Part shown: in pieces, positions 5,601-47,189 of the stretch
How positions within the stretch are numbered: position 1 is the first letter of the stretch
How the letters are laid out: each line of letters opens with the position of its first letter
DNA from: Octopus sinensis
Taxonomy: Eukaryota
DNA length: 49,668 nucleotides
Direction of reading: 5' to 3'
NCBI RefSeq assembly: GCF_006345805.1
Contig: NW_021834456.1
Coordinates: 1-49,668, forward strand
The notes under the pieces: generated by a model
Seen by the model: only the letters and a program-made list of their open reading frames with translations
Database searches by the model: none
Told to the model about the DNA's origin: nothing
Program-made: the position numbers and the translations under genes

Positions 5601-6258
5601 CTCTGTTCACATCTCTTTAGTTTATGCGCATTAGCTTTGATCCTATGTTTTACTTCCTCATTCACAACATTGATTCCCTTTCTCTTTAAAATATACTCCC
5701 CCTCTAGCTCGACAAATTTCTCTCGTAGAACTTCATTTCTCCTTTTCCGTTCCAGAATATTAATATGCTTTTTGGTTTCGTTAATAGACTGCGTTATTCT
5801 TCTTTTCTAGCATGGTTCCTTCAGGTGATGTTGATATTAGCCTTTGGTTTTCAAACCTATCTTCTGGGCTACAAGTGAGAGTCAACGGTCAGGAAGGCAG
5901 TACCACCAGACATTGGGGTGCGTCTACAGCACGACGAGACACTATGGAATCAACGTCATCCTGATTGTCCAATGCAGTTGTGAGAGTCCCCAGTTGTAAC
6001 GATGCTCCAGACGAATTGGTTTTCCTGTTTGATTTTGTTTCGGTAAAAATAACAGTAAAAATAAAATTTCAGTAAATGTTATGAATATATTTTAACCGTT
6101 AATAACCTCAAACTATTCGACAAAGAGTACTTTTAGTATCAAATTAATCTAGTTTCTCTTTCTCGTATAACGTTACGGTGGACTTGAAATGAGTTCAGCT
6201 TCTCTGAGAGGCGATAATTAGAAAGGGGTGTAGTTAGAAAAATAAACGTAGCAGTGTA

Positions 6259-14219: not shown

Positions 14220-15025
14220 AAAGCAAAAGCAAGGCCATGTAGGGGAACAGGGAGTTATGTACAGGGAGGGTGGTCATACAAAGAGTTCAGGCCATTTCTA
14301 TTCAAGAGAGACTTTGAACCGAGCGGGCGTCGGCATCTTCACTATCTCGTCCGGCAGCTTTTTCCACGGATCCGCAACCCAGACGGAGAAAGCCCCTGAT
14401 GAAATCGTCGCAGATAGAGCTTTTCGGAGTGACCCCACAGCCCACGCTCTGGAGCACGAGTGAAGAACAGCTCTTTTGAGGTTACACTTTCCGCTTATGA
14501 TGTTGGGAGCGAGAATGAGATCACCACAGCGTCGTCGTTTTTCGAGAGAATAAAGATCGAGCGTCTTCAGCCTTTCTTCATAAGACAAATGCTTGAGACA
14601 AAGAACCATGCGGGTAGCCAGCTTCTGGACTCTTTCCAGATGATGCATGTCTTTGAGGAGACAAGGAGAAGAGGCTTGAATCCCGTACTCCAATATGGGT
14701 CTCATATTGAGCATTCCGAATGACCGTAGAATCAAAAACAGAACTCCGCGTGCTTTGTTGGCAGCATGGACGCATTGGGCCGAAGGCGAAAAGGAAGAAT
14801 CCACCAAGATACCCAGGTCCTTTACTTGGTCGGTTTTCTCCATCAGCAGACGACGCGGCTCGAAGTCAAGTTGACTTGCAGAAGAGGAGCCAACAGGCGG
14901 ATGACAGCACTTTGACACGTTCAGACACAGGTCCCATTCGTTTGATCATCTCCAAACTTGGTGGAGGCATCGACGAAGATCATCTATATCACTGTGAGGA
15001 ACGACCAGTTTGAAATCGTCGGCAA
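14220..15025 (-). mobile_element. 5'-truncated CR1-group LINE (end of RT plus 3' UTR)
   Basis: IFADDFKLV..LNVSKC..VKDLGILVDSSFSPSAQCVHAANKARGVL..RPILEYG..LERVQKLATRMV..LSYEERLKTLDLYSLEKRRRCGDLIL. Short (TTTGC)-type tail at about 14220. Confidence 0.9.
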
Positions 15026-17889: not shown

Positions 17890-17935
<46 letters not shown>

Positions 17936-17939
<4 letters not shown>

Positions 17940-18094
17940 GACGGGCGTCTTTCAGTTTTCGTCTAACAAATCCACTCAAGGCTTTGGTCGACCCGACGCT
18001 ATAGTAGAAGACACTTGCCCAAGGTGCCACGCAGTGGGACTGAACCCGGAATCATGTGGTTGGTAAGCAAGCTACTTACCACACAGCCACTCCT
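17936..18094 (-). mobile_element. tRNA-derived SINE family B, 5' half
   Basis: Minus strand AGGAGTGGCTGTGTGGTAAGTAGCTTGCTTACCAACCAC..GGGTTCAGTCCCACTGCGTGGCACCTTGGGCAAGTG. Truncated at the internal (TA)n. Confidence 0.9.
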
Positions 18095-18170
18095 ACGACA
18101 TTTTTATATGTATATATATTCATGTAAATTTGTTTACATTTATTCATATTTGTTTCTTTAATCTTATGTA

Positions 18171-22656: not shown

Positions 22657-23056
22657 CTTCTCTTTGACTCTTTTACTTGTTTCAGTCATTCGACTGCGGC
22701 CATGCTGGAGCACCGTCTTTAGTCGAGCAAATCGACCCCAGGACTTATTCTTTGTAAGCCTATTATTTATTCTATCGGTCTCTTTTGCCGAACCGCTAAG
22801 TTACGGGGACGTAAACACACCAGAATCGGTTGACAAGCGACGTTGGGGGGACAAACACAGACACACAACACCCTTCACACACATATATATATATATACGA
22901 CGGGTTATATTCAGTTTCCGTCTACCAAAATCAACTCAGAAGGCTTTGGTCGGCCCGAGGCTATAGTAGAAGACACTTGGCCAAGGTGACACGCAGTAGG
23001 AGTGAGCCCGGAACCATGTGGTTCGTAAGCAAGCTACTAAGCACACAGCCACTTCT
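22657..23056 (-). mobile_element. SINE family B, full length
   Basis: Head at 23056, internal (CA)/(TA) tract, and the tail TTTTACTTGTTTCAGTCATT.GACTGCGGCCATGCTGGAGCACC shared with other copies. Confidence 0.9.
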
Positions 23057-23059
23057 ACG

Positions 23060-23200
23060 TTCATTTTCATGCTTGGAATTCAAATTTCGCCGAGTTCGAC
23101 TTCCTATTTCTTCCTTTCTGGGTTGATAAAATAAGCACCAGTCGAACTATCTGGTCGATGTAATCGACTCAAACCCTACTCCTAACTGGCTAGCCTTGTT
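23060..23200 (+). mobile_element. Degenerate SINE family C
   Basis: TTCAAATTTCGCCGAGTTCGACTT..GTTGATAAAATAAGCACCAG..GGTCGATGTAATCGAC. Confidence 0.65.
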
Positions 23201-23795: not shown

Positions 23796-23890
23796 GTAGA
23801 TTAGTACAATTGTTTCATACTAAAAACATTTAATTTCAAGCTGCAAATATTACAGAAAATATAATGTCAAGTATTCATCAGCTAAATCAC
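23796..23890 (-). ncRNA. Type I hammerhead ribozyme, long stem II, palindromic stem III
   Basis: GUGAUUUAG-CUGAUGA-AUACU..(58-nt stem II)..AGUAU-GAAA-CAAUUG-UA-CUAAUCUAC. Predicted GUA cleavage after 23805. Stem I is bulged. Confidence 0.7.
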
Positions 23891-24173
23891 ATATAGGTTT
23901 TCCATATATTCTTAGAGAGTGTAAATTCTTAGAGAGTGAGTTCCATGAATTTGAAGTAAGATTCCAAGCAGACTATATATGTTTTCCAACAATACAAACT
24001 TCTTCTTGGAATCTTACTTCAAATTCATGGAACTCACTCCTATAACTTCATAAGGATATTTACACTCTCTAAGACTATATGGAAAACCTATATGTGATTT
24101 AGCTGATGACCTCGGTGGAATTTGAAGTCAGAACGAAATACCACTATGTTAGACGAAATACCACTATGCATTA

Positions 24174-28002: not shown

Positions 28003-28375
28003 ATAAATATTAGGCAATAAATCCAAATTCACAGGGAAAAATCAGATTTAGGATTGAATCCAATTTTATAGCAAAATATTATATAATATTAATTAGAGAC
28101 AAAACCACTATTTTGCAAATCAAACAAAGAAAGACTTAATCCAATACATAAAAAAATTTAATATCAGGTGGATTTCAGATCTTCTATTCAATTTTAAGTT
28201 ATTAATAAATTAAAATTGAATAGAAGATCTGAAATCCACCTGATGAATGTCATTAGAAGAGACACGAAACAATTGTAGTGGCGAATTTAATTTAATTTAA
28301 TTTATATTAAATTTTTTTATGTATTGGATTAAGTCTTTCTTTGTTTGATTTGTAAAATAGTGGTTTTGTCTCTAA

Positions 28376-28390
<15 letters not shown>
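27999..28390. mobile_element. PLE-type foldback element in (TA)n
   Basis: 28076-28163 is the reverse complement of 28304-28390. 28163-28196 is the reverse complement of 28210-28243. (TA)n lies at 27960-27998 and 28385-28418. Confidence 0.85.
28236..28281 (+). ncRNA. Minimal type I hammerhead ribozyme (PLE type)
   Basis: CCAC-CUGAUGA-A-UGUC-auuagaaga-GACA-C-GAAA-CAAUUG-UA-GUGG. Stem I is 4 bp, stem III is the palindrome ACAAUUGU, and cleavage is predicted at GUA after 28277. Confidence 0.8.
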
Positions 28391-28421
<31 letters not shown>

Positions 28422-29312: not shown

Positions 29313-29873
29313 TGCCCTGATGCAGTGCCAGACAATGGCTCCTGATCTTAACTGATTGGAAGTGTTATCATGTACATATTTTGTCTTCGCATAAAAGATA
29401 GGCTACAGCAAATATTCTGCTCAATACCACAAATTTGCTTGTCAGTTGTTTGACCTTAACCAGTTGACCATGTCCCTTAGTGGCTGACGATTTGTGCATC
29501 TCTGATCACGAGCAGAAGTAGTGGGGGAGCATCATAGCCATGTGTTGAAAGGAATTCTTGGAGGTTTGGATAATTCACCTTTGGAAACATGGGTGTTTTG
29601 TTCAACATCCTTAAACAACCCTTATTCAGGGACCTTTTGAGCGGGATGGGCTACTCGACCAGAAGAAAGTTCTAACTGGGCCCCACCTGCAAGGTCATGC
29701 GCTGTTTATCTTGATGCGAGATCACCATGTCGTGCACATATGGTTGTGATGCATGTGCCTGGCGTACCCTTATCAGACAGGTAGTCATGATAGGTATACT
29801 GGGCTTCGTATATTTTACCCCTGTGTCACTTTGATGGCATGCACTGCTCTCTCACTTGATGATGATGATGATG
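29313..29873 (+). mobile_element. Unclassified non-LTR 3' region (family D) ending in a trinucleotide tail
   Basis: About 540 nt homologous along its length to 30092-30602. Both end in CTCTCTCACT plus a (GAT)n or (AAT)n tail. No ORF. Confidence 0.65.
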
Positions 29874-30093: not shown

Positions 30094-30602
30094 GCAGTAC
30101 CAGGCGCTGGATCTCATAGCTTCTGATCTCAATTGGTTGGAAGTCTTATCATGTGCATGTTTTGTCTTGGTATAAAAGATGGACGACAGCAAAATTTCTT
30201 CTCATTACCACAGATTTGCTTATCAGTTGCTTGACCTTTACCAGTTGAGCATGTCACTTGGTGGCTGACGATATGTGCATTTCTCATCATGACCAGAAGT
30301 AGTTGGGGAGGGGCAGCTTAACCATGTGTTGAAAGGAATTCTTTGGGGCTTGAATAATATAATTCACCTCTGGAAACATGAGCGGTTCGTTCAACATCAT
30401 TAAACAGCCCTTATTCAGGGACCTTTTGAGGAGGATGGGTTACTTGACCCGAAGAGAATTCTAACTGGGCCTCATCTATTTATCTTGATTATAAGATCAT
30501 CACGTCGCGCACATATGTGATAAGGTGTACCCTTATCAGGCGAGTAGTTATGATAGGTATACCGGGCTTCGTATTGCTCTCTCACTCAATAATAATAACA
30601 AC
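30092..30602 (+). mobile_element. Family D, second copy
   Basis: Colinear with 29313-29860, with internal deletions. Confidence 0.65.
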
Positions 30603-30812: not shown

Positions 30813-30987
30813 AATTATAATAATAATAAGAAGAAGAAGACGAAGAAGAAGAAGAGGAGGAGGAGGGAGGAGGAGGAGAAAAAGGAGAAGAGGAGGAGGA
30901 GAAGAAGAAGAAGAAGTAGGAGAAGAGGAAGAAGAAGAGGAAGGAGTAGCAGAAGAAGAAGAAGAAGAAGAAGAAGAAGAAGAAGAG
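30813..30987. repeat. (AAT)n followed by a (GAA)/(GGA)n polypurine tract
   Basis: About 160 nt almost entirely purine on the + strand. Confidence 0.95.
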
Positions 30988-31845: not shown

Positions 31846-32262
31846 GCAGTAGTAATAATAATAATAATAATGATAAACGTTTCCTACTATGGGATCAAAG
31901 CTGAAATGTGGGGCCAGGGTAATAATAAAGGCAGTAGACCCACGCATGAATTTTCAGTGACAATTAACACATGAACAAAGGAACAGATTTATGCAATTTA
32001 GCTACAAAGAACGCAATTTAGTAGAAGCGGCAAACGTTATATGGTTCCAAACAACGTTAAAAATCTCAAGATTTCAGATAAAATGTCTACCGTTATCGCT
32101 ACATACACGCATATAAGTTAATTCATTGAGATATGTTCACACGCACAAACATGCCCCGATGCAAGTACATTCTCAGTGTAGTCGGCGAGTATTGCGCAAT
32201 AGAGCATGTGAGCTTATGCACTAATGGTGCACTAATGAATTAATGAAACGCGTATATATTAT

Positions 32263-32692
32263 CTCTCTTTACTCTTTTACTCTTTTACTTGTTTCAGTCA
32301 TTTGACTGCGGCCATGCTGGAGCACCGCCTTTAGTCGAGCAAATCGACCCCGGGACTTATTCTTTGTAAGCCCAGTACTTATTCTATCGGTCTCTTTTGC
32401 CGAACCGCTAAGTGATGGGGACGTAAACACACCAGCATCGGTTGTCAAGCAATGCTAGGGGGACAAACACAGACATACAACCACACACATATATATATAT
32501 ACATATATATACATATATATATATACATATATCATATATATATATATATATACATATATATACATATATATATATATAATACATATATATACATATATAT
32601 ATATATATATACATATATACATATATATAATATATATACATATATTATATATATACATATATATACATATATATATATATATACATATATAC

Positions 32693-32790: not shown

Positions 32791-32822
<32 letters not shown>

Positions 32823-33011
32823 ATATATACATATATATATATATACATATATACGACAGGTTTCTTTCAGTTTCCGCCTACCAAATCCACTCACAAGGCA
32901 TTGGTCGGCCCGGGGCTATAGCAGAAGACACTCGCCCAAGATGCCACGCAGTGGGACTCAACCCGGAACCATGTGGTTGGTTAGCAAGCTACTTACCACC
33001 CAGCCACTCCT
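32263..33011 (-). mobile_element. SINE family B, full length, with the internal (TA/CATA)n expanded to about 370 nt
   Basis: Head at 33011 and tail (CTTTTA)n at 32263. Confidence 0.9.
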
Positions 33012-33049
33012 GCGCTTAGTGATATATATATATATATATATAATATATA

Positions 33050-33330
33050 TATATATATATAAACGGCAAAATATATGTCTGCCTGTGAGTGTGTCCTTTA
33101 TACAAATCCACAATTTTTCAGTTAGAGGGCTTCCATTTCCTATGGTTATTTAAAGCCGGCTAAGGGTTGGTCGTGCACATCTGTACATTTCCCCAGTTAC
33201 CCCACAAAGCCATTAAAGATGAGTAGAAGTGACTTTTTTGTGAATTTTCTATCCAAAACCCAATCAAAATGCCCGAAACTTGATACGCCAGCTAACTGTA
33301 TGTAATTGGTCGGAGATTTGGACAGTACTC
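33050..33330 (+). mobile_element. Helitron-like non-autonomous element, 5' part
   Basis: TATATATAAACGGCAAAAT..GTCTGCCTGTG..CCTTTATACAAATCCACAATTTTTCAG, shared with 24174-24253. No 3' CTRR hairpin identified. Confidence 0.35.
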
Positions 33331-34882: not shown

Positions 34883-34948
34883 TAGCGAGATAGGAAAAAA
34901 TATTGATTGACTGCTGGAGTGTTTGATATGTATATATATATATATATG

Positions 34949-36701
34949 CTCTGTTTTCAGCAATCCTGATATGGCCGATCTGGGCTGTATCAGTGATGTC
35001 AACCCCCAACACACTATATCGGACATAACGTTTAGTGCCCCTGATGTCTTAGCGGCGATAAATGAAATAAAACACAATTCAGCAGTAGGCCCCGATAGGT
35101 TCCCTGCTTGTGTCCTGAAGGTGTGTCGACACCAACTTGCATCTCCCCTTGTTAATCTGTGGAGAAATCACTGGATGCTGGCTATATTCCAAAAAACCTT
35201 CTGTCCAGTCTGTTGTCCCAGTTTTCAAAAAGGGAAACAAGTCCCTTGCAGTGAACTACCGTCCGATCTCACTCACCTCTCATATCATCAAGGTATTTGA
35301 GAGGTGGTGAGATCTCGAATAACCCAATTTCTGGAAAGCAACAGACGGCTGATCTCTAACCAACATGGGTTCCGTAATGGAAGGGACTGCCTAACGCAGC
35401 TCCTGCATCACTTTGAGGACATTTTGAGAGCTTTGGGAGAGGGCTCCAACACCGATGTCATCTACCTTGATTTCAGTAAGGCCTTCGACAGGGTCGATCA
35501 CAAGATCCTATTGAAAAGACTATCCAACATTGGTGTCTCTGGAAAGTTACTGAAATGGATCAAGTGTTTCCTGACAGACAGATCTCAACATGTTGTAGTT
35601 GAAGGGGTAAAATCAAGCCCAGCCAAAGTCAGTAGTGGCTTTCCGCAAGGCACTGTGCTGGGCCCACTTATTTTCATCATCTACATTAATGACATCAATG
35701 ACATCATCAAGTACAGCAACATAAAAATCTTTGCAGATGATTCCAAGCTACAGAAGGTCATAAATGAGGCGAGTGACCGGACATGCCTTCAGTCAGATCT
35801 ACTGGCTGTTATCCAATGGGCAGAAAAAAACAATATGCTGCTGAACGAGGATAAATTTGAGTTAATCCACTTTGGAAAAGAGGATGCCCTGAAACTCCCA
35901 TACTCCCTTCCTTCAGGTGAAACTCTCGCAGCGTCCAACAACATCAGAGACTTGGGAGTAATTGTGGACAACAACATAAGCTGGGCCACTCATATAAACA
36001 CCAAAGTTGGCATGGCCCGCAGAATGTGTTCCTGGATTCTCAGAACTTTCCAGTCGAGAGATATCCACACCATTATCCTTCTCTTCTCCACTTTTGCCCG
36101 ACCCCAACTTGAATACTGTTGTCCACTGTGGTCTCCCCACTAATACAAAGTATCATAAAGGTTGAAGCACCTCAAAGGGCAATCACAAGAAAGATAGATG
36201 GCATGACAGGCCTCGACTATTGGGGTCGACTAGAAAAGCTAAAACATTATTCTCTCCAACGTCGTCGTGAGCGCTACATCATCTGCATGATGTGGAAAAT
36301 ATTCCATCAGCATTGCCCAAATGATGTTGGCATCACTTTTAAGGTACATCCAAGGCTTGGGCCCCGTGCCATCCGCCCAAAACAAAAATCGCACTCTCAT
36401 CTCATAACAACAATACGGCACAATTATTTCACCTCAATTGGACCCGCTCTCTTTAACATTACACCAAAACACATTAAAACAGAAACTGACCCTATAGGGT
36501 TCAAAAAGTCCTTGGACAAATTCCTTCAAGAAATCCCGGATAAACCCCCTACACCCGGATATGTCTCTGTAAACAATAACTATCTACTTGAGTGGGCCAT
36601 AGTGCCCAAATTCTGACTTGAAAGACTTCACCAGGTGGTGCTATTAAGTTAGATATGGCCTGGGCCAATAATGGCCAAAACCTATCAAAGTATCAAAGTA
36701 T
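34949..36701 (+). mobile_element. Young 5'-truncated CR1-group LINE with a complete RT domain and 3' tail
   Basis: SAVGPDRFP..NYRPISLTSHIIKVFER..QHGFRNGRDCLTQL..DVIYLDFSKAFDRVDH..SGFPQGTVLGPLIF..IFADDSKL..RDLGVIVD..RPQLEYCCPLWSP..YWGRLEKLKHYSLQRRRERY. Ends in a (TATCAAAG)x2 tail. The endonuclease domain is absent. Confidence 0.95.
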
Positions 36702-38804
36702 ATGTTTATAATGTATATATTCATACTTATACGTATAAATATATATAAATATATATATGTATATATTCATACATATATACATAAATATATATATGTATAT
36801 ATTCATACATATACGTATAAATATATATAAATATATATATGTATATATTCATACATATACGTATAAATATATATAAATATATATATTCATACATATACAT
36901 ATAAATATATATAAATATATATATGTATATATTCATACATATACATATAAATATATATATATATGTATATATTCATATACATATAAATATAAATAAATAT
37001 ATATATGTATATATTCATATACATATAAATATATATAAATATATATATGTATATATTCATATACATATAAATATATATAAATATATATATGTATATATTC
37101 ATATACATATAAATATATATAAATATATATATGTATATATTCATATACATATAAATATATATAAATATATATATGTATATATTCATACATATACATATAA
37201 ATATTTATTCAATATAGGGTAGCAAAAAAAAATTCAGCAGAAATTATTTGCCACCAGCGTCTAGTAGGAAAAATAGATAGTCAGAGACTATTAATACATT
37301 CAACATCATGTTTTTTTAAAATTTTCTCCTGGTTTTTCGAATTAATACTTGTTTGCGGTTTAAGCCTTGGCTGCTATTTCTAGTAGGTTGAACAGCCTAT
37401 TATGGCTGTTCCTATATTTTGATGATATACATATAAATATATATATATGTATATATTCATACATATACATATAAATATATATAAATATATATATGTATAT
37501 ATTCATACATATACATATATATATAAATATATATATGTATATATTCATATATAGTAGTACCCTCAATATAATATAAATGAATATTTTCAAAGAGGAAGAA
37601 TTTACGGATTTTTTCTCTTACGAGGTTTTTCACGCTGACTACTGATAATTTCTTTTAAAGATTTTATCCTCAATTGTTAATTTATATATATTCATATACA
37701 TATAATAATATATATACATGTATATATATATATATAAATACATATAAATATATATATATACATGTATATATATATATATAAATACATATAATATATATAT
37801 ATATACATGTATATATATATATAAATACATATAATATATATATATATGTGTGTATATATATATATACATATAAATATATATATATGTGTGTATAGATATA
37901 TATACATATAATATATATATATGTGTGTATAGATATATATACATATAATATATATATATGTGTGTATATATATATACATATAAATATGTATATATGTGTG
38001 TGTATATATATATACATATAAATATGTATATATGTGTGTGTATATATATACATATAAATATGTATATATGTGTGTATATATATATATACATATAAATATG
38101 TATATATGTGTGTATATATATATATACATATAAATATGTATATATGTTTGTATATATATACATATAAATATATATATATTTGTGTATATATATACATATA
38201 ATATATATATATGTGTGTATATATATACATATAAATATATATATATGTGTGTATATATATACATATAAATATATATATATATGTGTGTATATATATATAC
38301 ATATAACTATATATATATGTGTATATATATATATATACATATAACTATATATATATGTGTATATATATACATATAAATATATATATATATATATGTGTAT
38401 ATATATACATATAACTATATATAAATGTGTATATATATACATATAACTATATATATATGTGTATAGATATACATATAAATATATATATATATATATGTGT
38501 ATATATATACATATAACTATATATGTGTATATATATACATATAAATATATATATATGTGTATAGATATACATATAAATATATATATATATATATGTGTAT
38601 ATATATACATATAATATATATGTGTATATATATACATATAAATATATATATATATAATGTGTATATATACATATAACTATATATATGTGTATATATATAC
38701 ATATAAAATATATTATATATATATGTGTATATATTACATGTAAATATATATATATGTGTATATATATACTTGTAAATATATATATATGTGTATATATATA
38801 CTTG

Positions 38805-38845
<41 letters not shown>

Positions 38846-38876
38846 ATATATATATATGTAAATATATATATATATT
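36702..38876. repeat. Compound AT-rich micro/minisatellite with two unique islands (about 37205-37420 and 37555-37680)
   Basis: Higher-order 30-45-nt units such as ATATATGTATATATTCATACATATACATATAA and TATATGTGTGTATATATATACATATAA. Confidence 0.9.
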
Positions 38877-39277
38877 GGAGTGGCTGTGTGGTAAGTAGCT
38901 TGCTAACCAACCACATGGCTCCGGGTTCAGTCCCACTGCGTGGAATCTTGGGCAAGTGTCTTCTGCTATAGCCCCGGGCCGACCAATGCCTTGTGAGTGG
39001 ATTTGGTAGACGGAAACTGAAAGAAGCCTGTCGTATATATGTATATATATGTATGTGTGTGTGTTTGTGTGTTTGTCCCCCTAGCATTGCTTGACAACTG
39101 ATGCTGGTGTGTTTACGTCCCCGTCACCTAGTGGTTCGGCAAAAGAGACCGATTGAATAAGTACTGGGCTTACAAAGAATAAGTCCCGGGGTCGATTTGC
39201 TCGACTAAAGGCGGTGCTCCAGCATGGCCGCAGTCAAATGACTGAAACAAGTAAAAGATAAAAGATAAAAGAAAGAT
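38877..39277 (+). mobile_element. SINE family B, full length, young
   Basis: GGAGTGGCTGTGTGGTAAGTAGC.. through to an (AAAGAT)n tail. Highly similar to the 32.3-33.0-kb copy. Confidence 0.9.
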
Positions 39278-39465
39278 ATATGTATATATATACATGTAAA
39301 TATATATATATATGTGTATATATATACATGTAAATATATATATATATATTTGTGTATATATATACATGTAATATATATATATATGTGTATATATATATAC
39401 ATATAAATGTATATATATACATATATATACAAATGTGGTGTATATATTATACATATATATACAAA

Positions 39466-41088: not shown

Positions 41089-42240
41089 ATACATATACGC
41101 ATAAATAATTCACCTGCCTATGCTCTCATGTCCGCAAATATTTATACTTACGTTTGCATATGCCGTGTGTGTGTGTGTGTGTGTATATTTATCTATCTAT
41201 ATATATATATATCATATCACGTCTGTTTACATATAAAAAGACTTGCATGTGTGTATGAAGCTATTCATGATTATTCTTTAAAAGTGTTATGATATATTAC
41301 TTCGTTGTATATTAAGGTCACTTATATGTGTGACATGAATTATATTACTCTATCAAAGTTCCATTATTTCGTTTTCGTCTTATATATGACGCATGTGTGC
41401 CCTAGTTACGCGCATTGATTTGGGGTGCAAAATCATTAGAAGGTCGTTATAAATCAATACGCAATTTACGTTCAAGAAAATAGATGTCCTGTCAACGTCC
41501 ATGACAGATAAACGGTAGAGATTCGTGATGCCTCGCTACTAACTAATGCACATTATCTTCCGTCGAATTTCATCAGTTTTCTTGTCTCATATACATACAT
41601 ATATATGCATACGTACATACAGATAGACAGACATTCATACATACATAGTTCTAACATATATTCATAGATATATCTATGTTTCTGAGTTCGCTTATAAAGA
41701 TAAAATTAGGCTTTTTATATGCATAACGGCATCGAATTGACTATTAACAAAATAATACCGAGGTGTGCAATTAATTCAGTATTTTATATAAAGTTTCATC
41801 TGTCCTGCCCGCCAAATTTGGTTCTGGTGTTCGCTGAATTTTTCCTCTAGAGAACTTTCTTTGTAGTTTGATCGTTGAAGATCTATTTCTAGCATACGGC
41901 CGACTACCTAGTAGTTTTGCCCTGCCAATATACTCATATATTAGAATTTTCTCTGATTTCTCAGATTTTTTGTATGCTAGAATACTGGTTTTAAATTGAT
42001 ATTAAAATTAATATTAATTTATCTCCCTCATTATTTAAATATTGAAATAAATACGTTCTCTAGTAGTAAGCACTAACCGCAGTTAATTATTTACTGCAGT
42101 TCTTCGTTTCAGGAATTCATTAGCGCGCCGGAACTAAGACATTTGAAATTGTATACCTAATGTAATCGGTAAAACTGAAAACGAGTCTGTTTTGGCACAA
42201 AATGCTGGGGTTAGTTTTGTCGATTGCATTTACACTGAAC

Positions 42241-42319
42241 GATTGTACTGATGAGGCCACGGACATTTGAATTATGTAAGTTATTCTTTTGTTAAAGGCC
42301 GAAACCGAGGTGTGCAATT
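42241..42319 (+). ncRNA. Type I hammerhead motif, array 1 copy a (G at position 17)
   Basis: GAUUGUA-CUGAUGA-GGCC..(38 nt)..GGCC-GAAA-CCGAGG-U-G-UGCAAUU. Confidence 0.75.
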
Positions 42320-42786
42320 AATTCTGTTTTTTATATAAATTTTCATCTGTATGCCCGCCAAATTTGGTTCGGGTGTTCGCTGAATTTTTCCTCTAGAGAA
42401 CTTTCTTTGTAGTTTGATCGTTGAAGATCTATTTCTAGCATACGGCCGACTACCTAGTAGTTTTGCCCTGCCAATATACTCATATATTAGAATTTTCTCT
42501 GATTTCTCAGATTTTTTGTATGCTAGAATACTGGTTTTAAATTGATATTAAAATTAATATTAATTTATCTCCCTCATTATTTAAATATTGAAATAAATAC
42601 GTTCTCTAGTAGTAAGCACTAACCGCAGTTAATTATTTACTGCAGTTCTTCGTTTCAGGAATTCATTAGCGCGCCGGAACTAAGACATTTGAAATTGTAT
42701 ACCTAATGTAATCGGTAAAACTGAAAACGAGTCTGTTTTGGCACAAAATGCTGGGGTTAGTTTTGTCGATTGCATTTACACTGAAC

Positions 42787-42865
42787 GATTGTACTGATGA
42801 GGCCACGGACATTTGAATTATGTAAGTTATTCTTTTGTTAAAGGCCGAAACCGAGGTGTGCAATT
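42787..42865 (+). ncRNA. Type I hammerhead motif, array 1 copy b
   Basis: Identical to 42241-42319, offset by 546. Confidence 0.75.
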
Positions 42866-43332
42866 AATTCTGTTTTTTATATAAATTTTCATCTGTATGC
42901 CCGCCAAATTTGGTTCGGGTGTTCGCTGAATTTTTCCTCTAGAGAACTTTCTTTGTAGTTTGATCGTTGAAGATCTATTTCTAGCATACGGCCGACTACC
43001 TAGTAGTTTTGCCCTGCCAATATACTCATATATTAGAATTTTCTCTGATTTCTCAGATTTTTTGTATGCTAGAATACTGGTTTTAAATTGATATTAAAAT
43101 TAATATTAATTTATCTCCCTCATTATTTAAATATTGAAATAAATACGTTCTCTAGTAGTAAGCACTAACCGCAGTTAATTATTTACTGCAGTTCTTCGTT
43201 TCAGGAATTCATTAGCGCGCCGGAACTAAGACATTTGAAATTGTATACCTAATGTAATCGGTAAAACTGAAAACGAGTCTGTTTTGGCACAAAATGCTGG
43301 GGTTAGTTTTGTCGATTGCATTTACACTGAAC

Positions 43333-43411
43333 GATTGTACTGATGAGGCCACGGACATTTGAATTATGTAAGTTATTCTTTTGTTAAAGGCCGAAACCGA
43401 GGTGTGCAATT
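43333..43411 (+). ncRNA. Type I hammerhead motif, array 1 copy c
   Basis: Identical to 42241-42319, offset by 1092. Confidence 0.75.
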
Positions 43412-43696
43412 AATTCTGTTTTTTATATAAATTTTCATCTGTATGCCCGCCAAATTTGGTTCGGGTGTTCGCTGAATTTTTCCTCTAGAGAACTTTCTTT
43501 GTAGTTTGATCGTTCATGATCTATTTCTAGCATACGGCCGACTACCTAGCAGTCTTGCCCTGCCAATATACACATATATTAGAATTTTCTCTGATTTCTC
43601 AGATTTTTTGTATGCTAGACTACTGGTTTTAAATTGATATTAAAATTAATATTAATTTATCTCCCTCATTATTTAAATATATATATATATAAGCGT

Positions 43697-44053
43697 AGGA
43701 GTGGCTGTGTGGTAAGTAGCTTGCTTACCATCCACATGGTTCCGGATTCAGTCCCACTGCGTGTCACCTTGGGCAAGTGTCTTCTACTCTAGCCTCAGGC
43801 TTACGAAAGCCTTCTGAGTGGATTTGGTAGGCAGAAACTAAAAGAAGCCCATCGTATATATGTATGCGTGTGTGTTTGTGTGTCTGTCCTCGGAACATCT
43901 CTTGACAACCGATGGTGGTGTGTTTACGTCCCCTTAATATAGCGGTTTGGCAAAGGAGACTGATAGAATAAGTACTAGGCTTACAAAGAATAAGTACCGG
44001 TGTTGATTTGTTCGACTAAAGGCAGTAATCCAGCATGGCCACAGTTAAACGAC
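43697..44053 (+). mobile_element. SINE family B
   Basis: AGGAGTGGCTGTGTGGTAAGTAGCTTGCTTACC..CACCTTGGGCAAGTG..CCAGCATGGCCACAGT. Confidence 0.9.
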
Positions 44054-44115
44054 AGATGTTTTCGCTATATTTTCGCATATCATTACACATACACAAAAGG
44101 ACGCACTTGCGCGCT

Positions 44116-44433
44116 AACAAATCGACCCCAGGACTTATTCTTTGTAAGTCTAGTACTTTTTTTATCGGGCCCTTTTTCCGAACCGCTAAGTTACGAGGAC
44201 GTAAACATACACTAGCATCGGTTGTCAAGCGATGTTGGAGGAGGCAGACAAACACACACATATATACATATATACGACGGGTTTCTTTCAGTTTCCGTCT
44301 ACTAAATCCACATACAAGGCATTGGTCGTTCCGAGGCTATAGTAAAAAAACACTTACCCAAGGTACCTCGCAATGGGACTGAACCTGGAATCATGTGGTT
44401 GGTAAGCAAGCTACTTACCACACAGCCACTCCT
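44116..44433 (-). mobile_element. SINE family B, inverted relative to the neighbouring copy
   Basis: Head reverse complement GCTACTTACCACACAGCCACTCCT at 44410-44433. Confidence 0.9.
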
Positions 44434-44540
44434 GCGCCTATATTTACTTTCATTCGATCAATCACGGACATCATCCTCACAGTTCACCTCTGAGTGTCAC
44501 TCTGTTCTTGACCTTCATATATGGCTACATGTCTGATCAG

Positions 44541-44680: not shown

Positions 44681-46055
44681 GGGTAGACGTTTTCTACATC
44701 AAAATGCATATCATCATGACAATGCCTTCGTCACCTTACGCAGGTACGTCTGCCCCGTGACCCAAGTGGGATATCATTCATAATCTTCCAAGACAATGTT
44801 TTTCAAAGCCAAAACATTTAGATGAGGATTGAAAGGACAATCGTGACGGAAGAAACATCCGATGTCAAATTACTTAGGGAGTGTCATGCCGCCTCCTTTA
44901 TTTCCTGTCACTATTAAGATACACACTACTTGTCTGGTACGGCTGGCATCATGCAATATTCCCTAATGTACTCACGCGTTTGTCCTTTGTTCGCCACTAA
45001 TAAATTCCATTTTCTAGTGTGATCTACGCCATAAAATGTTCCTGATTCTCCTTTCCAAGCAAGCATACAACCTTCATAGTATTCCTCGCCTGACTATGTT
45101 TTACTGCAGCAGTTACCTAACAGCTTTTCAAGCAGAATATGCAATATATATGTATTACTTTTTTCCAAAGAATGTATGAAGTCTAAGGCTAATTTTGGTT
45201 TTCTTTTTACCTTGAGACAAAACCATTGAGACAAAAATTGGAAGGAATAGATAGATAGAATGCGAAAGAGAATGATAGGCTGTAATAGATATAGTTGGTG
45301 ATAATATGGACTCACTTAAGTAACATTTGGCTGCTTATTCTAGAGGCTGTCAAATTTGTAAAGGCTCTGACGTTAGTTCACTTCAGTCGACATTGCTATA
45401 ATTATTGTCCTTTAGACCCAAGTTATGCCTAATAGACAGGACATATGTTGGGAGATTTCTAGACTTAGAAACATGAAAATCTATTGAATTTTTTTAGGAA
45501 AAAATGTTGTCACCATCTTTATTACTACAAGCATGTTGTACAATCATTGCCGAATAAACAAAGCATATACATATACACTCTGTGGTTTCAAGTATTTATA
45601 TTCTTGGCTTACCGAATAATCAATAAAAGAAGTGGACATTCAATACAATACTGTGTAACATTCGATAATATCCTGGTTATCTCAGTTTTCTCTTATCAGT
45701 AAAATAACTGAAATGTACCATCGATCTGTGCTTCAAGCTTAGACATATGTGTCATAGATGCATAATTTGAGAGAACATCTATTATCTTGATAAAATAGTC
45801 TGAAAGAATCAATGATGCAAACGGCATAGAAATATTTTTATTGAACTTCGGATAACAGCTGTGGAATTAATAAGGGTCGTCTGATGATTCTGTTATTCTG
45901 AAGCGCACGATATATCATACGTGTGTAGCTATCGGTATACGCATCTAGCGTTGCATATATGCTTACAAACACACACACACAAAAGTATATATGTGTGTAT
46001 GAATTTATCTATCTCTCTATCTATCGAGCTAGCTACCTTTCCCTCTCTATCTATG

Positions 46056-46109
<54 letters not shown>

Positions 46110-46271
46110 AATCAAATTGCGATAAAATAAAAATAATTATAATCGCTGGTATTACTAACAAAGCCATATATTTTTCATATATCAGTACATTAAGGCGAAA
46201 TATGTGCTAGGAATACAGAAGCTTGATAAATTAAGTGAAATGAAGATAAAAACATTTACTAAACCGGTAAT

Positions 46272-46343
46272 TCTCAGACTGCAGTTTCTTTCTTTTCAGC
46301 AATAAAGATAATTTATTTGCTCAGGGAGGATTCTTCAGTGAGA
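46272..46343 (-). ncRNA. Type I hammerhead ribozyme, array 2 copy a
   Basis: UCUCA-CUGAAGA-(43-nt stem II)-GAAA-CUGCAG-UC-UGAGA. Perfect 5-bp stem I, stem III palindrome ACUGCAGU, GUC cleavage after 46277. Confidence 0.8.
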
Positions 46344-46667
46344 CCCTGTTTTTCTGGGATCCTAACTCACTAGAAGCATGTGCGTCTAATGATTTACTCT
46401 CCCTAACTAATCATATCACTGCGCAGACTCCGAACGTCCCGACAACACTAGGGAATTCTGGTATATCGCCTGGCGCTCACAATTTATCGAGAAATATGTA
46501 AACAAATCAAATTGCGATAAAATAAAAATAATTATAATCGCTGGTATTACTAACACAAGCCATATATTTTTCATATATCAGTACATTAAGGCTAAATATG
46601 TGCTAGGAATACAGAAGCTTGATAAATTAAGTGAAATGAAAATAAAAACATTTACTAAACCGGTAAT

Positions 46668-46739
46668 TCTCAGACTGCAGTTTCTTTCTTTTCAGGATTA
46701 AAGATAATTTATTTGCTCAGGGAGAATTCTTCAGTGGGA
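46668..46739 (-). ncRNA. Type I hammerhead ribozyme, array 2 copy b
   Basis: UCCCA-CUGAAGA-AUUCU..AGAAA-GAAA-CUGCAG-UC-UGAGA. One mismatch in stem I. Cleavage predicted after 46673. Confidence 0.75.
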
Positions 46740-47189
46740 CCCTGTTTTTCTGGGATCCTAACTCACTAGAAGCATGTGCGTCTAATGATTTACTCTCCCT
46801 AACTAATCATATCACTGCGCAGACTCCGAACGTCCCGACAACACTAGGGAATTCTGGTATATCGCCTGGCGCTCACAATTTATCGAGAAATATGTAAACA
46901 AATCAACTTGCGATAAAATAAAAATAATTATAATCGCTGGTATTACTAACACAAGCCATATATTTTTCATATATCAGTACATTAAGGCGAAATATGTGCT
47001 AGGAATACAGAAGCTTGATAAATTAAGTGAAATGAAGATAAAAACATTTACTAAACCGGTAATTCTCAGACTGCAGTTTCTTTCTTTTCAGCAATATATA
47101 TATACACATAACTCTACACATTCTTTTATTCTCTTATGAATTTCAGTTCAAAGGCTGTGGCTATGCTGGGTAATCACGCACACACACAC

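What the first reader, a model, noticed from the sequence alone, without database searches (positions are those of the whole stretch)
46107..47095. 396-nt tandem unit carrying one hammerhead ribozyme per copy: candidate octopus retrozyme / circRNA cassette
Seen: 2.5 tandem copies of a non-coding 395-396-bp unit. On the minus strand each junction folds into a type I HHR with an intact core (CUGAAGA, GAAA, GUC triplet), a 5-bp stem I (UCUCA/UGAGA), an extended stem II, and a perfectly palindromic stem III (ACUGCAGU). Cleavage sites fall at 46277, 46673 and 47069, exactly 396 nt apart. Established: tandem type I HHR satellites (newt satellite 2, schistosome SM-alpha, metazoan non-LTR retrozymes) are cut to monomers that can circularise. 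PLE-associated HHRs with palindromic stem III act as dimers, which tandem copies allow in cis. Inference: a read-through transcript would release a 396-nt monomer or circRNA mobilised by a PLE RT. Internal T runs argue against Pol III, so transcription would need Pol II read-through. I cannot tell whether this family has been described.
Basis: partly seen in the sequence, partly recalled or inferred. Interest (0 to 1): 0.92.

Follow-up and report, generated by a model that had tools for sequence, protein, structure and literature searches.

The report
Weak hammerhead ribozyme in tandem repeat
A 396-bp DNA unit repeated 2.5 times carries a recognisable but sub-standard self-cutting RNA motif (a hammerhead ribozyme), one of four such motifs in this 50-kb stretch, so it is probably a mobile 'retrozyme'-type element of a known kind, and whether this copy can still cut itself is doubtful.

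Summary
The 396-bp, 2.5-copy tandem array is real. The minus-strand type I hammerhead (HHR) motif is also real and beyond chance. Rfam Hammerhead_1 aligns end to end to copy A at 23.1 bits, but only when about 100 nt is submitted, and a candidate-quality descriptor gave 0 hits in 40 Mb of composition-matched random sequence.

- Only copy A has all parts.
- Copy B has a C.A mismatch in helix I and a broken distal helix II (17.6 bits).
- Copy C lacks the CUGAAGA box, so no ribozyme serves the 47069 site.
- Helix II does not close on the core (A.A at 10.1/11.1). The score is below Rfam's 34-bit threshold, and a competing fold is about 6 kcal/mol better.

The best support came from outside the given coordinates. 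The window holds four independent type I HHR-like loci (0.01 expected). One is a second tandem array (546 bp x 3.5, 41757-43691) with a canonical helix II but G at position 17. On their HHR strands both arrays start inside the ribozyme and end in (TA)n, as expected for elements mobilised by Penelope-like elements (PLEs).

Verdict: probably a retrozyme-type insertion with a crippled or weak ribozyme. It is a new member of a known kind, and its activity, copy number and expression are untested.

The parts
46107..47096 (-). Tandem array of a 396-bp unit, 2.5 copies (A 46107-46505, B 46506-46901, C 46902-47096). Read on the hammerhead (minus) strand, it starts 5' inside the ribozyme and ends 3' at a (TA)30 tract.
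   Evidence: TRF period 396, 97% matches; alignment A1; copies 98% identical; no other copy in the window.
46272..46343 (-). Hammerhead-like motif, copy A. Helix I UCUCA 46343-46339 / UGAGA 46276-46272; CUGAAGA 46338-46332; 43-nt helix II region 46331-46289; GAAA 46288-46285; helix III C-UGCA-G 46284-46279; U16.1 46278; C17 46277.
   Evidence: Rfam RF00163 at 23.1 bits, E 7.6e-4, model positions 1-45 of 45, gathering score 34. The only hit of the strict descriptor in the window. Hammerhead fold -5.7 vs MFE -11.8 kcal/mol.
46668..46739 (-). Hammerhead-like motif, copy B. The core and helix III are intact, helix I has a C.A mismatch (UCCCA), the proximal helix II is better (UUCU/AGAA), and the distal hairpin is broken by two substitutions. 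C17 is at 46673.
   Evidence: Rfam RF00163 at 17.6 bits, E 0.047, with helix II skipped.
47064..47096 (-). Half motif, copy C. It keeps the 3' part of helix II, GAAA, helix III, C17 (47069) and UGAGA. There is no CUGAAGA box and no helix I 5' strand, so it is not a ribozyme.
   Evidence: The array ends at 47096, and the flank has no CUGANGA in register.
46048..46109 (.). (TA)30 tract abutting the array, ending in ATATATATATATACA (46095-46109). This is the left copy of a 15-nt direct repeat that brackets the array, either a TSD or a (TA)n target.
   Evidence: TRF; direct repeat D7; 0 nt from the array end to a (TA)>=5 run, where only 6.3% of window positions lie in such runs.
47094..47108 (.). 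Right copy of the bracketing direct repeat, ATATATATATACACA.
   Evidence: D7, 14 of 15 identical.
46272..46343 (+). Competing plus-strand hairpin over the same bases: 27 bp, -22.4 kcal/mol, z -3.7 in copy A. It has decayed in copy B (-14.1).
   Evidence: The minus-strand C.A mismatches are G.U wobbles on the plus strand.
41757..43691 (+). Sister element: a tandem array of a 546-bp unit, about 3.5 copies at 98-99% identity. It starts 5' about 8 nt upstream of position 17 and ends 3' in (TA)6.
   Evidence: Self-BLAST; sequences; alignment. TRF missed it because the period exceeds 500.
42241..42319 (+). Hammerhead-like motif of the 546-bp unit, identical at +546 and +1092: GAUUGUA-CUGAUGA-GGCC[38 nt]GGCC-GAAA-C-CGAG-G-U-G17-UGCAAUU. 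Helix II is canonical (G10.1-C11.1), but position 17 is G.
   Evidence: The MFE (-18.5) is the hammerhead fold with C3 paired to G17. Rfam Hammerhead_3 gives only 14-16 bits.
28236..28281 (+). Solitary type I hammerhead-like motif of canonical size: CCAC-CUGAUGA-A-UGUC[9 nt]GACA-C-GAAA-C-AAUU-G-U-A17-GUGG. It lies inside a palindromic element (28076-28393) that ends in (TA)21.
23801..23885 (-). Solitary type I hammerhead-like motif: UUAG-CUGAUGA-AUAC[50 nt]GUAU-GAAA-C-AAUU-G-U-A17-CUAA. It sits at the edge of a 235-bp inverted repeat (23875-24109), with (TA)n on both sides.
   Evidence: No Rfam hit at E<=10.

Best explanation
The array is an insertion of a retrozyme-type element: a non-autonomous, non-LTR tandem retroelement that carries a type I hammerhead and is mobilised in trans by a Penelope-like element (PLE).

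Inferred mechanism. A unit-length or multimeric RNA of minus-strand sense was reverse-transcribed more than once round and integrated at a nick in a (TA)n microsatellite. That left a 5'-truncated 2.5-mer bracketed by a (TA)n-CA duplication.

The hammerhead in each unit is a true relative of the animal type I / PLE-type ribozymes: intact core, 5-bp helix I, 2-bp helix III with a palindromic tetraloop that allows dimer pairing, and a GUC site. In this lineage it has a long imperfect helix II. At this locus it is sub-canonical: A.A at 10.1/11.1 and a C.A inside helix II in copy A, a helix I mismatch plus a broken distal helix II in copy B, and no catalytic half in copy C.

I therefore expect weak or no self-cleavage here. 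At best, a minus-strand read-through transcript would release a single 396-nt monomer (46672 to 46277).

Shown: the array, the motif anatomy, its statistical excess, the sister motifs and the (TA)n ends.
Inferred: homology to hammerheads, retrotransposition through RNA, the PLE as mobiliser, and impaired catalysis.
For: Motif beyond chance:
- Rfam Hammerhead_1 aligns full-length at 23.1 bits, E 7.6e-4.
- There were 0 hits at candidate quality in 40 Mb x 2 strands of Markov-1 sequence.

Four independent type I HHR-like loci in the window against 0.010 expected:
- All share CUGA(U/A)GA...GAAA-C-N4-G-U-N17.
- Three of the four have an A directly after A9.
- Helix II closes on the core with 3-4 of its first 4 pairs in the three other loci, although the scan did not require it.
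- Three of the four have a 43-58-nt helix II region, so the 'extended stem II' is a local family trait.
- The 28240 motif also has a mismatch (A.C) at the helix II base.

Parallel with the second array (546 bp x 3.5): on their HHR strands both arrays begin inside the ribozyme and end in (TA)n.

Insertion signature: a 15-nt direct repeat brackets the 396-bp array. (TA)>=5 runs cover only 6.3% of the window, yet both ends of this array, and three of the four elements' 3' ends, lie at 0 nt from one.

Literature:
- Animal retrozymes are 150-450-bp, low-GC tandem repeats with type I HHRs and TSDs longer than 4 bp (PMC7229834).
- PLE-type HHRs have a 4-5-bp helix I, a larger helix II, an extra nucleotide after A9 and a palindromic helix III (PMC4209133).
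- Naiad and Neptune PLEs target (TA)n (PMC8557442).
- The axolotl HHR_Amex2 tolerates a U.U mismatch at the helix II base.

Impairment.
Against: - No other genomic copy of the 396-bp unit could be reached, so there is no family consensus and no within-family covariation.
- The Rfam score is below the gathering threshold (23.1 vs 34).
- G10.1-C11.1, called highly conserved in PLE HHRs, is absent.
- Four of the eight A/B differences fall in the 74-nt motif (binomial P 0.045), so there is no sign of purifying selection.
- The same bases fold far better on the plus strand (-22.4, z -3.7) than on the HHR strand (-11.8, z -0.4).
- The monomer is not unusually self-paired.
- No PLE ORF is in the window; the only RT is LINE-type RVT_1.
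- The sister motifs were found with a descriptor that demands helix I pairing, so their helix I 'covariation' is partly built in by the search.
- (TA)n is low-complexity sequence, so the TSD call is soft.
Confidence: 0.6

Rival explanations
1. A fully functional retrozyme cassette. Minus-strand read-through transcripts self-cleave, probably as dimers through the palindromic helix III, and release a 396-nt RNA that is circularised and retrotransposed.
For: The core, helix I (copy A), helix III and the GUC site are intact. Cofolding two motif copies uses the 8-bp ACUGCAGU intermolecular duplex (-11.1 kcal/mol) in its MFE. PLE-type HHRs are known to be weak in vitro, to act as dimers or to be protein-assisted (PMC4209133; PMC11167929). 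A mismatch at the helix II base is tolerated in HHR_Amex2.
Against: Monomer release needs two active ribozymes. Copy B has a helix I mismatch and scores 17.6 bits, and copy C has no core. The additive estimate for the dimeric hammerhead (-19.6 for A+A, -15.0 for B+A) is well above the cofold MFEs (-27.9 and -27.2). There is no 10.1-11.1 pair, the monomer is not highly self-paired, and no expression data could be consulted.
Confidence: 0.13
2. The element is HHR-derived, but the array arose at the DNA level by unequal exchange or replication slippage between flanking (TA)n tracts, starting from a single inserted unit. It did not arise by more-than-unit reverse transcription.
For: The window is full of microsatellites and other few-copy duplications. 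The copies are 98% identical. (TA)n lies at both ends.
Against: The junctions between units contain no (TA)n, and the array ends in a partial unit cut inside the ribozyme. The independent 546-bp array has the same polarity and the same kind of 5' truncation, which fits a shared template-copying mechanism better.
Confidence: 0.15
3. An ordinary minisatellite whose unit contains an imperfect inverted repeat. The hammerhead boxes on the minus strand are coincidental.
For: 'Stem I' is the base of a 27-bp plus-strand hairpin (z -3.7), while the HHR strand is no better than shuffles. Helix II fails the canonical test. The score is below Rfam's threshold. A looser descriptor is expected 0.07 times per window, so thousands of chance hits are expected per genome.
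Against: At the candidate's actual quality, 0 hits in 40 Mb. Rfam E 7.6e-4. Three further independent motifs of identical architecture lie in the same window against 0.010 expected in total, one of them in a second array with matching polarity.
Confidence: 0.08
4. The functional feature is the plus-strand hairpin, for example a pre-miRNA-like or other structured RNA, and not a minus-strand ribozyme.
For: Plus-strand hairpin of -22.4 kcal/mol; only 0.2% of shuffles do as well.
Against: It has decayed in copy B (-14.1, z -0.6). No Rfam family matches. The strand asymmetry is explained by a G/A-rich arm facing a U/C-rich arm. The substitutions give no directional signal.
Confidence: 0.03

Closest known systems
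Animal non-LTR retrozymes (Cervera & de la Pena 2020, PMC7229834), e.g. the 350-390-bp repeats of Mytilus galloprovincialis
   Same: Head-to-tail repeats of a few hundred bp, low GC, one type I hammerhead per unit, a short helix III, TSD-like flanks longer than 4 bp, arrays from dimers upward, and no LTR, PBS or PPT.
   Different: The ribozyme here is below Rfam's threshold and lacks the 10.1-11.1 pair. Its helix II region is 43 nt rather than about 4 bp plus a small loop. The monomer is not predicted to be highly self-paired. Copy number and circRNA expression are unknown.
Minimal / atypical hammerheads of Penelope-like elements (Cervera & de la Pena 2014, PMC4209133)
   Same: Short helix I (4-5 bp), a larger-than-usual helix II, an extra nucleotide after A9, palindromic 15.2-16.2 / loop 3 that allows dimers, and expected low intrinsic activity.
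   Different: Those motifs keep a highly conserved G10.1-C11.1 and sit in the pLTRs of an RT-EN element. Here 10.1/11.1 is A.A and no PLE ORF is nearby.
Axolotl HHR_Amex2 and newt satellite 2 hammerheads
   Same: Tandem ~330-350-bp repeats. Helix III is 1-2 bp with a tetraloop. Amex2 has a mismatch (U.U) at the base of helix II and cleaves efficiently only in dimeric constructs.
   Different: These are vertebrate families with short helix II and conserved loop 1 - loop 2 contacts, tens of thousands of copies and demonstrated cleavage and circRNAs.
Naiad PLE 'HHR_core / HHR_half_core' remnants (Craig et al. 2021, PMC8557442)
   Same: The CUGANGA and GAAA halves lie 35-50 nt apart and fail standard stem/loop descriptors. 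Naiads prefer (TA)n targets, and cephalopods carry Naiad remnants.
   Different: Those lie in the UTRs of RT-EN elements. Here they sit in short non-coding tandem units, and helices I and III are well formed.

Membership tests
Type I hammerhead ribozyme (Rfam RF00163) | Conserved core: C3 U4 G5 A6 N7 G8 A9, G12 A13 A14, and H (not G) at position 17 after U16.1 | tested here: met
   CUGAAGA, GAAA and GUC are present in copies A and B. Copy C has only the 3' half.
Type I hammerhead ribozyme (Rfam RF00163) | Helix I flanking the core and the cleavage site | tested here: met
   Copy A has 5 Watson-Crick pairs, UCUCA/UGAGA. Copy B has a C.A mismatch at the third pair.
Type I hammerhead ribozyme (Rfam RF00163) | Helix II stacked directly on the core, with a 10.1-11.1 base pair (usually G-C) | tested here: not met
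   A.A at 10.1/11.1. Copy A then has U-A, C.A, C-G, U-A, and no 2-bp core-adjacent helix is possible. Copy B has UUCU/AGAA, but its distal hairpin is broken.
Type I hammerhead ribozyme (Rfam RF00163) | Helix III with A15.1-U16.1 (short, with a palindromic loop, in animal type I) | tested here: met
   A-U and C-G pairs plus a UGCA tetraloop. The 8-nt palindrome ACUGCAGU is identical in A, B and C and forms a -11.1 kcal/mol duplex.
Type I hammerhead ribozyme (Rfam RF00163) | Score at or above the curated gathering threshold (34 bits) | tested here: not met
   23.1 bits (A) and 17.6 bits (B) in ~100-nt searches. No hit in larger searches.
Type I hammerhead ribozyme (Rfam RF00163) | Site-specific Mg2+-dependent self-cleavage | not testable with these tools
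   Needs in vitro transcription. Thermodynamics are unfavourable (hammerhead fold -5.7 vs MFE -11.8).
Animal non-LTR retrozyme | Head-to-tail repeats of 150-450 bp with low GC | tested here: met
   396 bp x 2.5, 34.8% GC.
Animal non-LTR retrozyme | A competent type I hammerhead in each unit | tested here: inconclusive
   One complete sub-canonical motif, one damaged and one truncated.
Animal non-LTR retrozyme | Insertion signature (TSD longer than 4 bp) | tested here: inconclusive
   A 15-nt direct repeat (14 of 15 identical) brackets the array, but it is (TA)n-rich low-complexity sequence.
Animal non-LTR retrozyme | Monomer RNA predicted to be stable and highly self-paired | tested here: not met
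   Circular minus-strand monomer is 62% paired vs 61% in shuffles, z -1.8.
Animal non-LTR retrozyme | Multicopy family dispersed in the genome; expressed as linear and circular monomer RNA | not testable with these tools
   No eukaryotic genome or transcriptome collection can be searched by DNA here. Indirect routes found nothing.
Penelope-like element (autonomous) | ORF with a telomerase-like RT and a GIY-YIG endonuclease between pLTRs | tested here: not met
   Of the ten ORFs submitted to Pfam (chosen from those of >=90 aa), one LINE-type RVT_1 fragment (35304-36143) and one weak zf-RVT hit were found, and no GIY-YIG. The remaining ORFs were not scanned.
Penelope-like element (autonomous) | Insertion preference for (TA)n (Naiad / Neptune clades) | tested here: met
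   Both array ends lie at 0 nt from a (TA)>=5 run, and so do three of the four HHR-element 3' ends. The background is 6.3%.

The most novel reading that the evidence does not exclude
The window samples an undescribed cephalopod lineage of type I hammerheads. Its marks are a 43-58-nt imperfect helix II and, in some members, a mismatch in place of the G10.1-C11.1 pair. The lineage is spread into (TA)n microsatellites as few-copy tandem arrays and as solitary or inverted copies. If members such as the 396-nt unit are catalytically active, as dimers or with protein help, they would relax the accepted hammerhead consensus and add cephalopods to the hosts of retrozyme circRNAs.
Probability: 0.25. 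Interest if true: 0.6.

Novelty: new member of a known kind. Interest (0 to 1): 0.4.

Why it matters
If confirmed genome-wide, this would add cephalopods to the animals known to carry hammerhead-bearing tandem retroelements. I found no paper describing this. It would also provide natural hammerhead variants with a very long helix II and no 10.1-11.1 pair, which are useful for defining what the ribozyme tolerates. And it would tie such elements to (TA)n-targeting PLE machinery.

There is also a practical lesson. Standard settings hid most of the evidence. Rfam's speed filters dropped the motif in every search longer than about 100 nt, because of its 29-50-nt loop-2 insertions. Tandem Repeats Finder's 500-bp period limit hid the sister array. 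Genome-wide censuses of hammerheads may therefore miss this class.

Tried and rejected
1. 'Not a hammerhead at all.' I held this view after Rfam found nothing at gathering thresholds or at E<=10 on 1.4 kb and helix II failed. I dropped it when a 106-nt search gave a full-length 23.1-bit hit, the 40-Mb simulation gave 0 hits and three sister motifs appeared.

2. Reaching other copies of the unit. All of these failed:
- exact look-ups of the unit ORF, two flanking ORFs and the distal LINE RT ORF (35304-36143)
- protein searches with the 52-aa and 96-aa frames
- a viral-contig pattern scan
- a metagenome scan, which gave one unrelated coding-like hit (L001) with no helix I and no repeat, about the number expected by chance

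3. The supplement of Craig et al. with Naiad consensus sequences is not held as text.

4. Directional signal from the A/B substitutions (plus-strand hairpin vs minus-strand hammerhead). One change favours each structure, so there is no signal.

5. A 'hybrid' helix II that takes the pairing allele at each A/B difference folds well (-5.9 kcal/mol; 0.15% of shuffles do as well), but it involves choosing alleles, so I treat it only as a hint of a better ancestor.

6. tRNA or SINE origin of the unit: ARAGORN found nothing.

7. A plus-strand hammerhead in the 396-bp unit: none.

8. A type III reading of the 546-bp motif: poor helices I and III, 14-16 bits. The type I reading fits, apart from G17.
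Full report
OBSERVATION

The tandem repeat is real. Tandem Repeats Finder gives 46099-47096, period 396, 2.5 copies and 97% matches. By alignment, copy A is 46107-46505, copy B is 46506-46901, and a partial copy C is 46902-47096. The unit is 34.8% GC. It has no other copy in the window. Its longest stop-free frame is 96 aa, with no homologue.

On the minus strand, copy A reads UCUCA-CUGAAGA-[43 nt]-GAAA-CUGCAG-UC|UGAGA, with C17 at 46277.

Three points are overstated:
- Copy C ends at 47096 inside 'stem II'. It has neither the CUGAAGA box nor the 5' strand of helix I, so no ribozyme serves the 47069 site.
- Copy B reads UCCCA, a C.A mismatch in helix I. Two more substitutions break the distal hairpin of helix II.
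- Helix II does not close on the core. Positions 10.1/11.1 are A.A. Copy A then has U-A, C.A, C-G, U-A, followed by an internal loop and a distal hairpin.

IS IT MORE THAN CHANCE?

My first answer was no. Rfam found no hammerhead at gathering thresholds, none at E<=10 on 1.4 kb and none among the 150 best of 275 permissive hits over the whole window. A descriptor loose enough to ignore helix II is expected 0.07 times per window.

That answer was wrong. When only 106 nt is submitted, so that the filters are at their laxest, Hammerhead_1 (RF00163) aligns over all 45 model positions to 46271-46344 (minus strand). The score is 23.1 bits with E 7.6e-4, against a gathering score of 34. Copy B gets 17.6 bits, E 0.047, with helix II skipped. 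The earlier misses were filter losses caused by the 29-nt insertion in loop 2.

I then ran a descriptor at the candidate's real quality: 5 Watson-Crick pairs in helix I, CUGANGA, a spacer up to 60 nt, GAAA, a 2-bp helix III with a tetraloop, and UH. It gave 0 hits in 40 Mb x 2 strands of Markov-1 sequence with the window's composition. That bounds the expectation at roughly 1e-5 or less per unit.

COUNTER-EVIDENCE WITHIN THE UNIT

- The hammerhead fold of copy A is worth -5.7 kcal/mol, against -11.8 for a competing hairpin on the same strand. That hairpin pairs CUG of the core with CAG of helix III, and G12-A13 with 10.2-10.3. For copy B the figures are -1.1 and -9.1.
- The same bases fold much better on the plus strand: 27 bp, -22.4 kcal/mol, z -3.7, versus z -0.4 on the minus strand. 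The minus-strand C.A mismatches are G.U wobbles on the plus strand.
- Four of the eight A/B differences lie in the 74-nt motif (binomial P 0.045). They give no directional signal between the two structures.
- The 396-nt monomer, linear or circular, is no more paired than shuffles: z -1.8, 62% vs 61% paired. Retrozyme circRNAs are described as highly self-paired (PMC7229834).
- A cofold of two motif copies does use the 8-bp ACUGCAGU duplex (-11.1 kcal/mol). The additive estimate for a full dimeric hammerhead (-19.6) is nevertheless well above the cofold MFE (-27.9).

EVIDENCE FROM THE REST OF THE WINDOW

No other copy of the unit could be reached in any collection. The only metagenome hit was an unrelated chance match. 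A self-comparison of the window then showed a second long-period array that TRF had missed because its period exceeds 500: 41757-43691, 546 bp x about 3.5, 98-99% identity.

Each of its three full units carries, on the plus strand, GAUUGUA-CUGAUGA-GGCC[38 nt]GGCC-GAAA-C-CGAG-G-U-G-UGCAAUU. This is the same architecture as the finding, with a canonical helix II (G10.1-C11.1) and again a long helix II region. Its unconstrained MFE (-18.5) is the hammerhead fold. However, position 17 is G and pairs with C3, which the NUH rule forbids. Rfam gives it only 14-16 bits, as type III.

A scan for core plus a 4-bp helix II is expected 0.017 times per window. It found this motif and one more, at 23881 on the minus strand.

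A uniform type I scan required CUGANGA, a spacer of 8-70 nt, GAAA, a 15.2-16.2 pair with a tetraloop, U16.1, any N17, and a helix I of at least 4 bp. It is expected 0.010 times per window and found four independent loci:
- 23881 (-): UUAG-CUGAUGA-AUAC[50]GUAU-GAAA-C-AAUU-G-U-A-CUAA
- 28240 (+): CCAC-CUGAUGA-A-UGUC[9]GACA-C-GAAA-C-AAUU-G-U-A-GUGG
- the 546-bp array (+), three copies
- copy A of the 396-bp array (-)

What the four share:
- Helix II pairs in the other three loci (3-4 of its first 4 pairs), although the scan did not require it.
- Three of the four have an A directly after A9. Cervera & de la Pena list this extra nucleotide as an emergent hallmark of PLE hammerheads (PMC4209133).
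- The 28240 motif also has a mismatch (A.C) at the helix II base.
- Three of the four have 43-58 nt between A9 and G12.

Rfam found no hammerhead at 23881. The helix I 'covariation' among the four is partly built in by the scan.

ELEMENT STRUCTURE

Read on their hammerhead strands, both arrays begin with a partial unit that starts inside the ribozyme, between the CUGANGA box and the cleavage site. The 396-bp array starts 27 nt upstream of C17, and the 546-bp array about 8 nt upstream of N17. Both end 3' directly in (TA)n: (TA)30 at 46048-46107 and (TA)6 at about 43680-43691.

The 396-bp array is bracketed by a 15-nt direct repeat, 46095-46109 ATATATATATATACA and 47094-47108 ATATATATATACACA.

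Perfect (TA)>=5 runs cover 6.3% of the window. Three of the four elements' 3' ends lie at 0 nt from such a run, and the fourth at 24 nt. The two solitary motifs sit in or beside inverted repeats (23875-24109 and 28076-28393).

These features match published descriptions:
- Retrozyme arrays run from dimers upward and have TSDs longer than 4 bp.
- PLEs insert as partial tandems, often with an adjacent inverted 5'-truncated copy, and the Naiad and Neptune clades prefer (TA)n (PMC8557442).
- A PLE endonuclease cleaves AT-rich DNA, and hammerhead cleavage is not required for insertion in vitro (PMC11167929).

No PLE ORF is in the window. The only RT is a degraded LINE-type RVT_1 fragment at 34923-36616. 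Its best named relative is an Octopus sinensis protein at 67% identity. A cephalopod origin is therefore plausible but not proven.

MECHANISM

Most likely (about 0.6), this is a retrozyme-type insertion. An RNA of minus-strand sense, circular or multimeric, was copied for more than one unit length by a PLE-type RT at a nick in a (TA)n tract. That left a 5'-truncated 2.5-mer.

Its hammerhead is a true relative of animal type I / PLE hammerheads, but it is sub-canonical here. I expect little or no self-cleavage. At most one 396-nt monomer (46672 to 46277) could be released, and only if the damaged copy B ribozyme also works.

The sister 546-bp array looks disabled in a different way (G17). Both arrays are probably dead-end copies of families whose active members, if any, lie elsewhere.

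Shown: the anatomy, the statistical excess, the sister motifs and the (TA)n ends. Inferred: homology to hammerheads, the RNA route, the PLE mobiliser and impaired catalysis.

Rivals:
- a fully active cassette (0.13)
- array growth at the DNA level from a single HHR-bearing unit (0.15)
- a chance motif on an inverted repeat (0.08)
- a functional plus-strand hairpin (0.03)

COMPARISON AND NOVELTY

The element works like an animal non-LTR retrozyme. It meets the structural criteria of repeat size, GC content, type I topology and helix III style. It fails or leaves open the ribozyme-quality criteria: the 10.1-11.1 pair, the Rfam threshold and a self-paired monomer. Copy number and expression cannot be tested here.

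I found no paper describing cephalopod hammerheads or retrozymes. The 2026 preprint that links retrozymes to PLE pLTRs covers vertebrates.

I rate it a new member of a known kind, of moderate interest (0.4). A specialist would expect such elements in a mollusc. The unusual points are the very long helix II, the missing 10.1-11.1 pair, and the way default Rfam filters and the TRF period limit hide these motifs.

Noticed in passing
window 41757-43691 (+): A second long-period tandem array: 546 bp x ~3.5 copies at 98-99% identity, missed by TRF because the period exceeds 500. Each full unit has a type I hammerhead-like motif with canonical helix II (GGCC/GGCC) and a 38-nt insertion, but G at position 17. 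The array starts just after GAAA and ends in (TA)6.
   Followed up: yes
window 28076-28393 (motif 28236-28281, +): A palindromic element (about 75-bp outer inverted arms plus a 31-bp perfect inner hairpin at 28167-28240). It carries a canonical-size type I hammerhead-like motif (GUA site, AAUU loop 3, A.C at the helix II base) and ends in (TA)21. Rfam's miRNA-like hits here only reflect the hairpin.
   Followed up: partly
window 23801-23885 (-) and inverted repeat 23875-24109: A solitary type I hammerhead-like motif with a 58-nt helix II region and the same GAAACAAUUGUA as the 28240 motif. Its CUGAUGA box lies in one arm of a 235-bp inverted repeat whose other arm carries a second GAUUUAGCUGAUGA on the plus strand. 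This recalls the inverted 5'-truncated copies described for PLEs.
   Followed up: partly
window 43668-44446; 38819-39286; 22658-23070; 32253-32509 and 32808-33061; 17894-18127: At least five copies (80-93% identity), one as an inverted pair, of a ~390-bp interspersed repeat. Its 5' end looks tRNA-derived (GGTTCCGGATTCAGTCCC), so it is probably a SINE. One copy directly follows the 546-bp array.
   Followed up: no
window 34923-36616 (+) and 36707-38875: A degraded LINE-type reverse transcriptase (RVT_1, three consecutive broken frames; best named relative Octopus sinensis LOC115227543, 67% identity). It is followed at once by a 2.2-kb AT-rich 42/84-bp minisatellite.
   Followed up: partly
window 14298-14918 (-) and 5309-5620 (+): Further retroelement debris: an ORF resembling the C-terminal region of the LINE protein, and a weak zf-RVT match (E 0.003).
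   Followed up: no
whole window: Method note. Rfam's permissive scan is swamped by about 270 false miRNA-type hits (mir-297, mir-3149, mir-1277) caused by (TA)n and (CA)n tracts. Its speed filters dropped the one hammerhead hit that a ~100-nt search recovers (copy A, 23.1 bits).
   Followed up: yes
window 29335-29811 / 30116-30574; 30828-30986: A diverged local duplication (79% identity over ~480 bp), and an (AAG)53 microsatellite that gives long spurious Lys/Arg/Glu and Ser/Leu/Pro ORFs.
   Followed up: no
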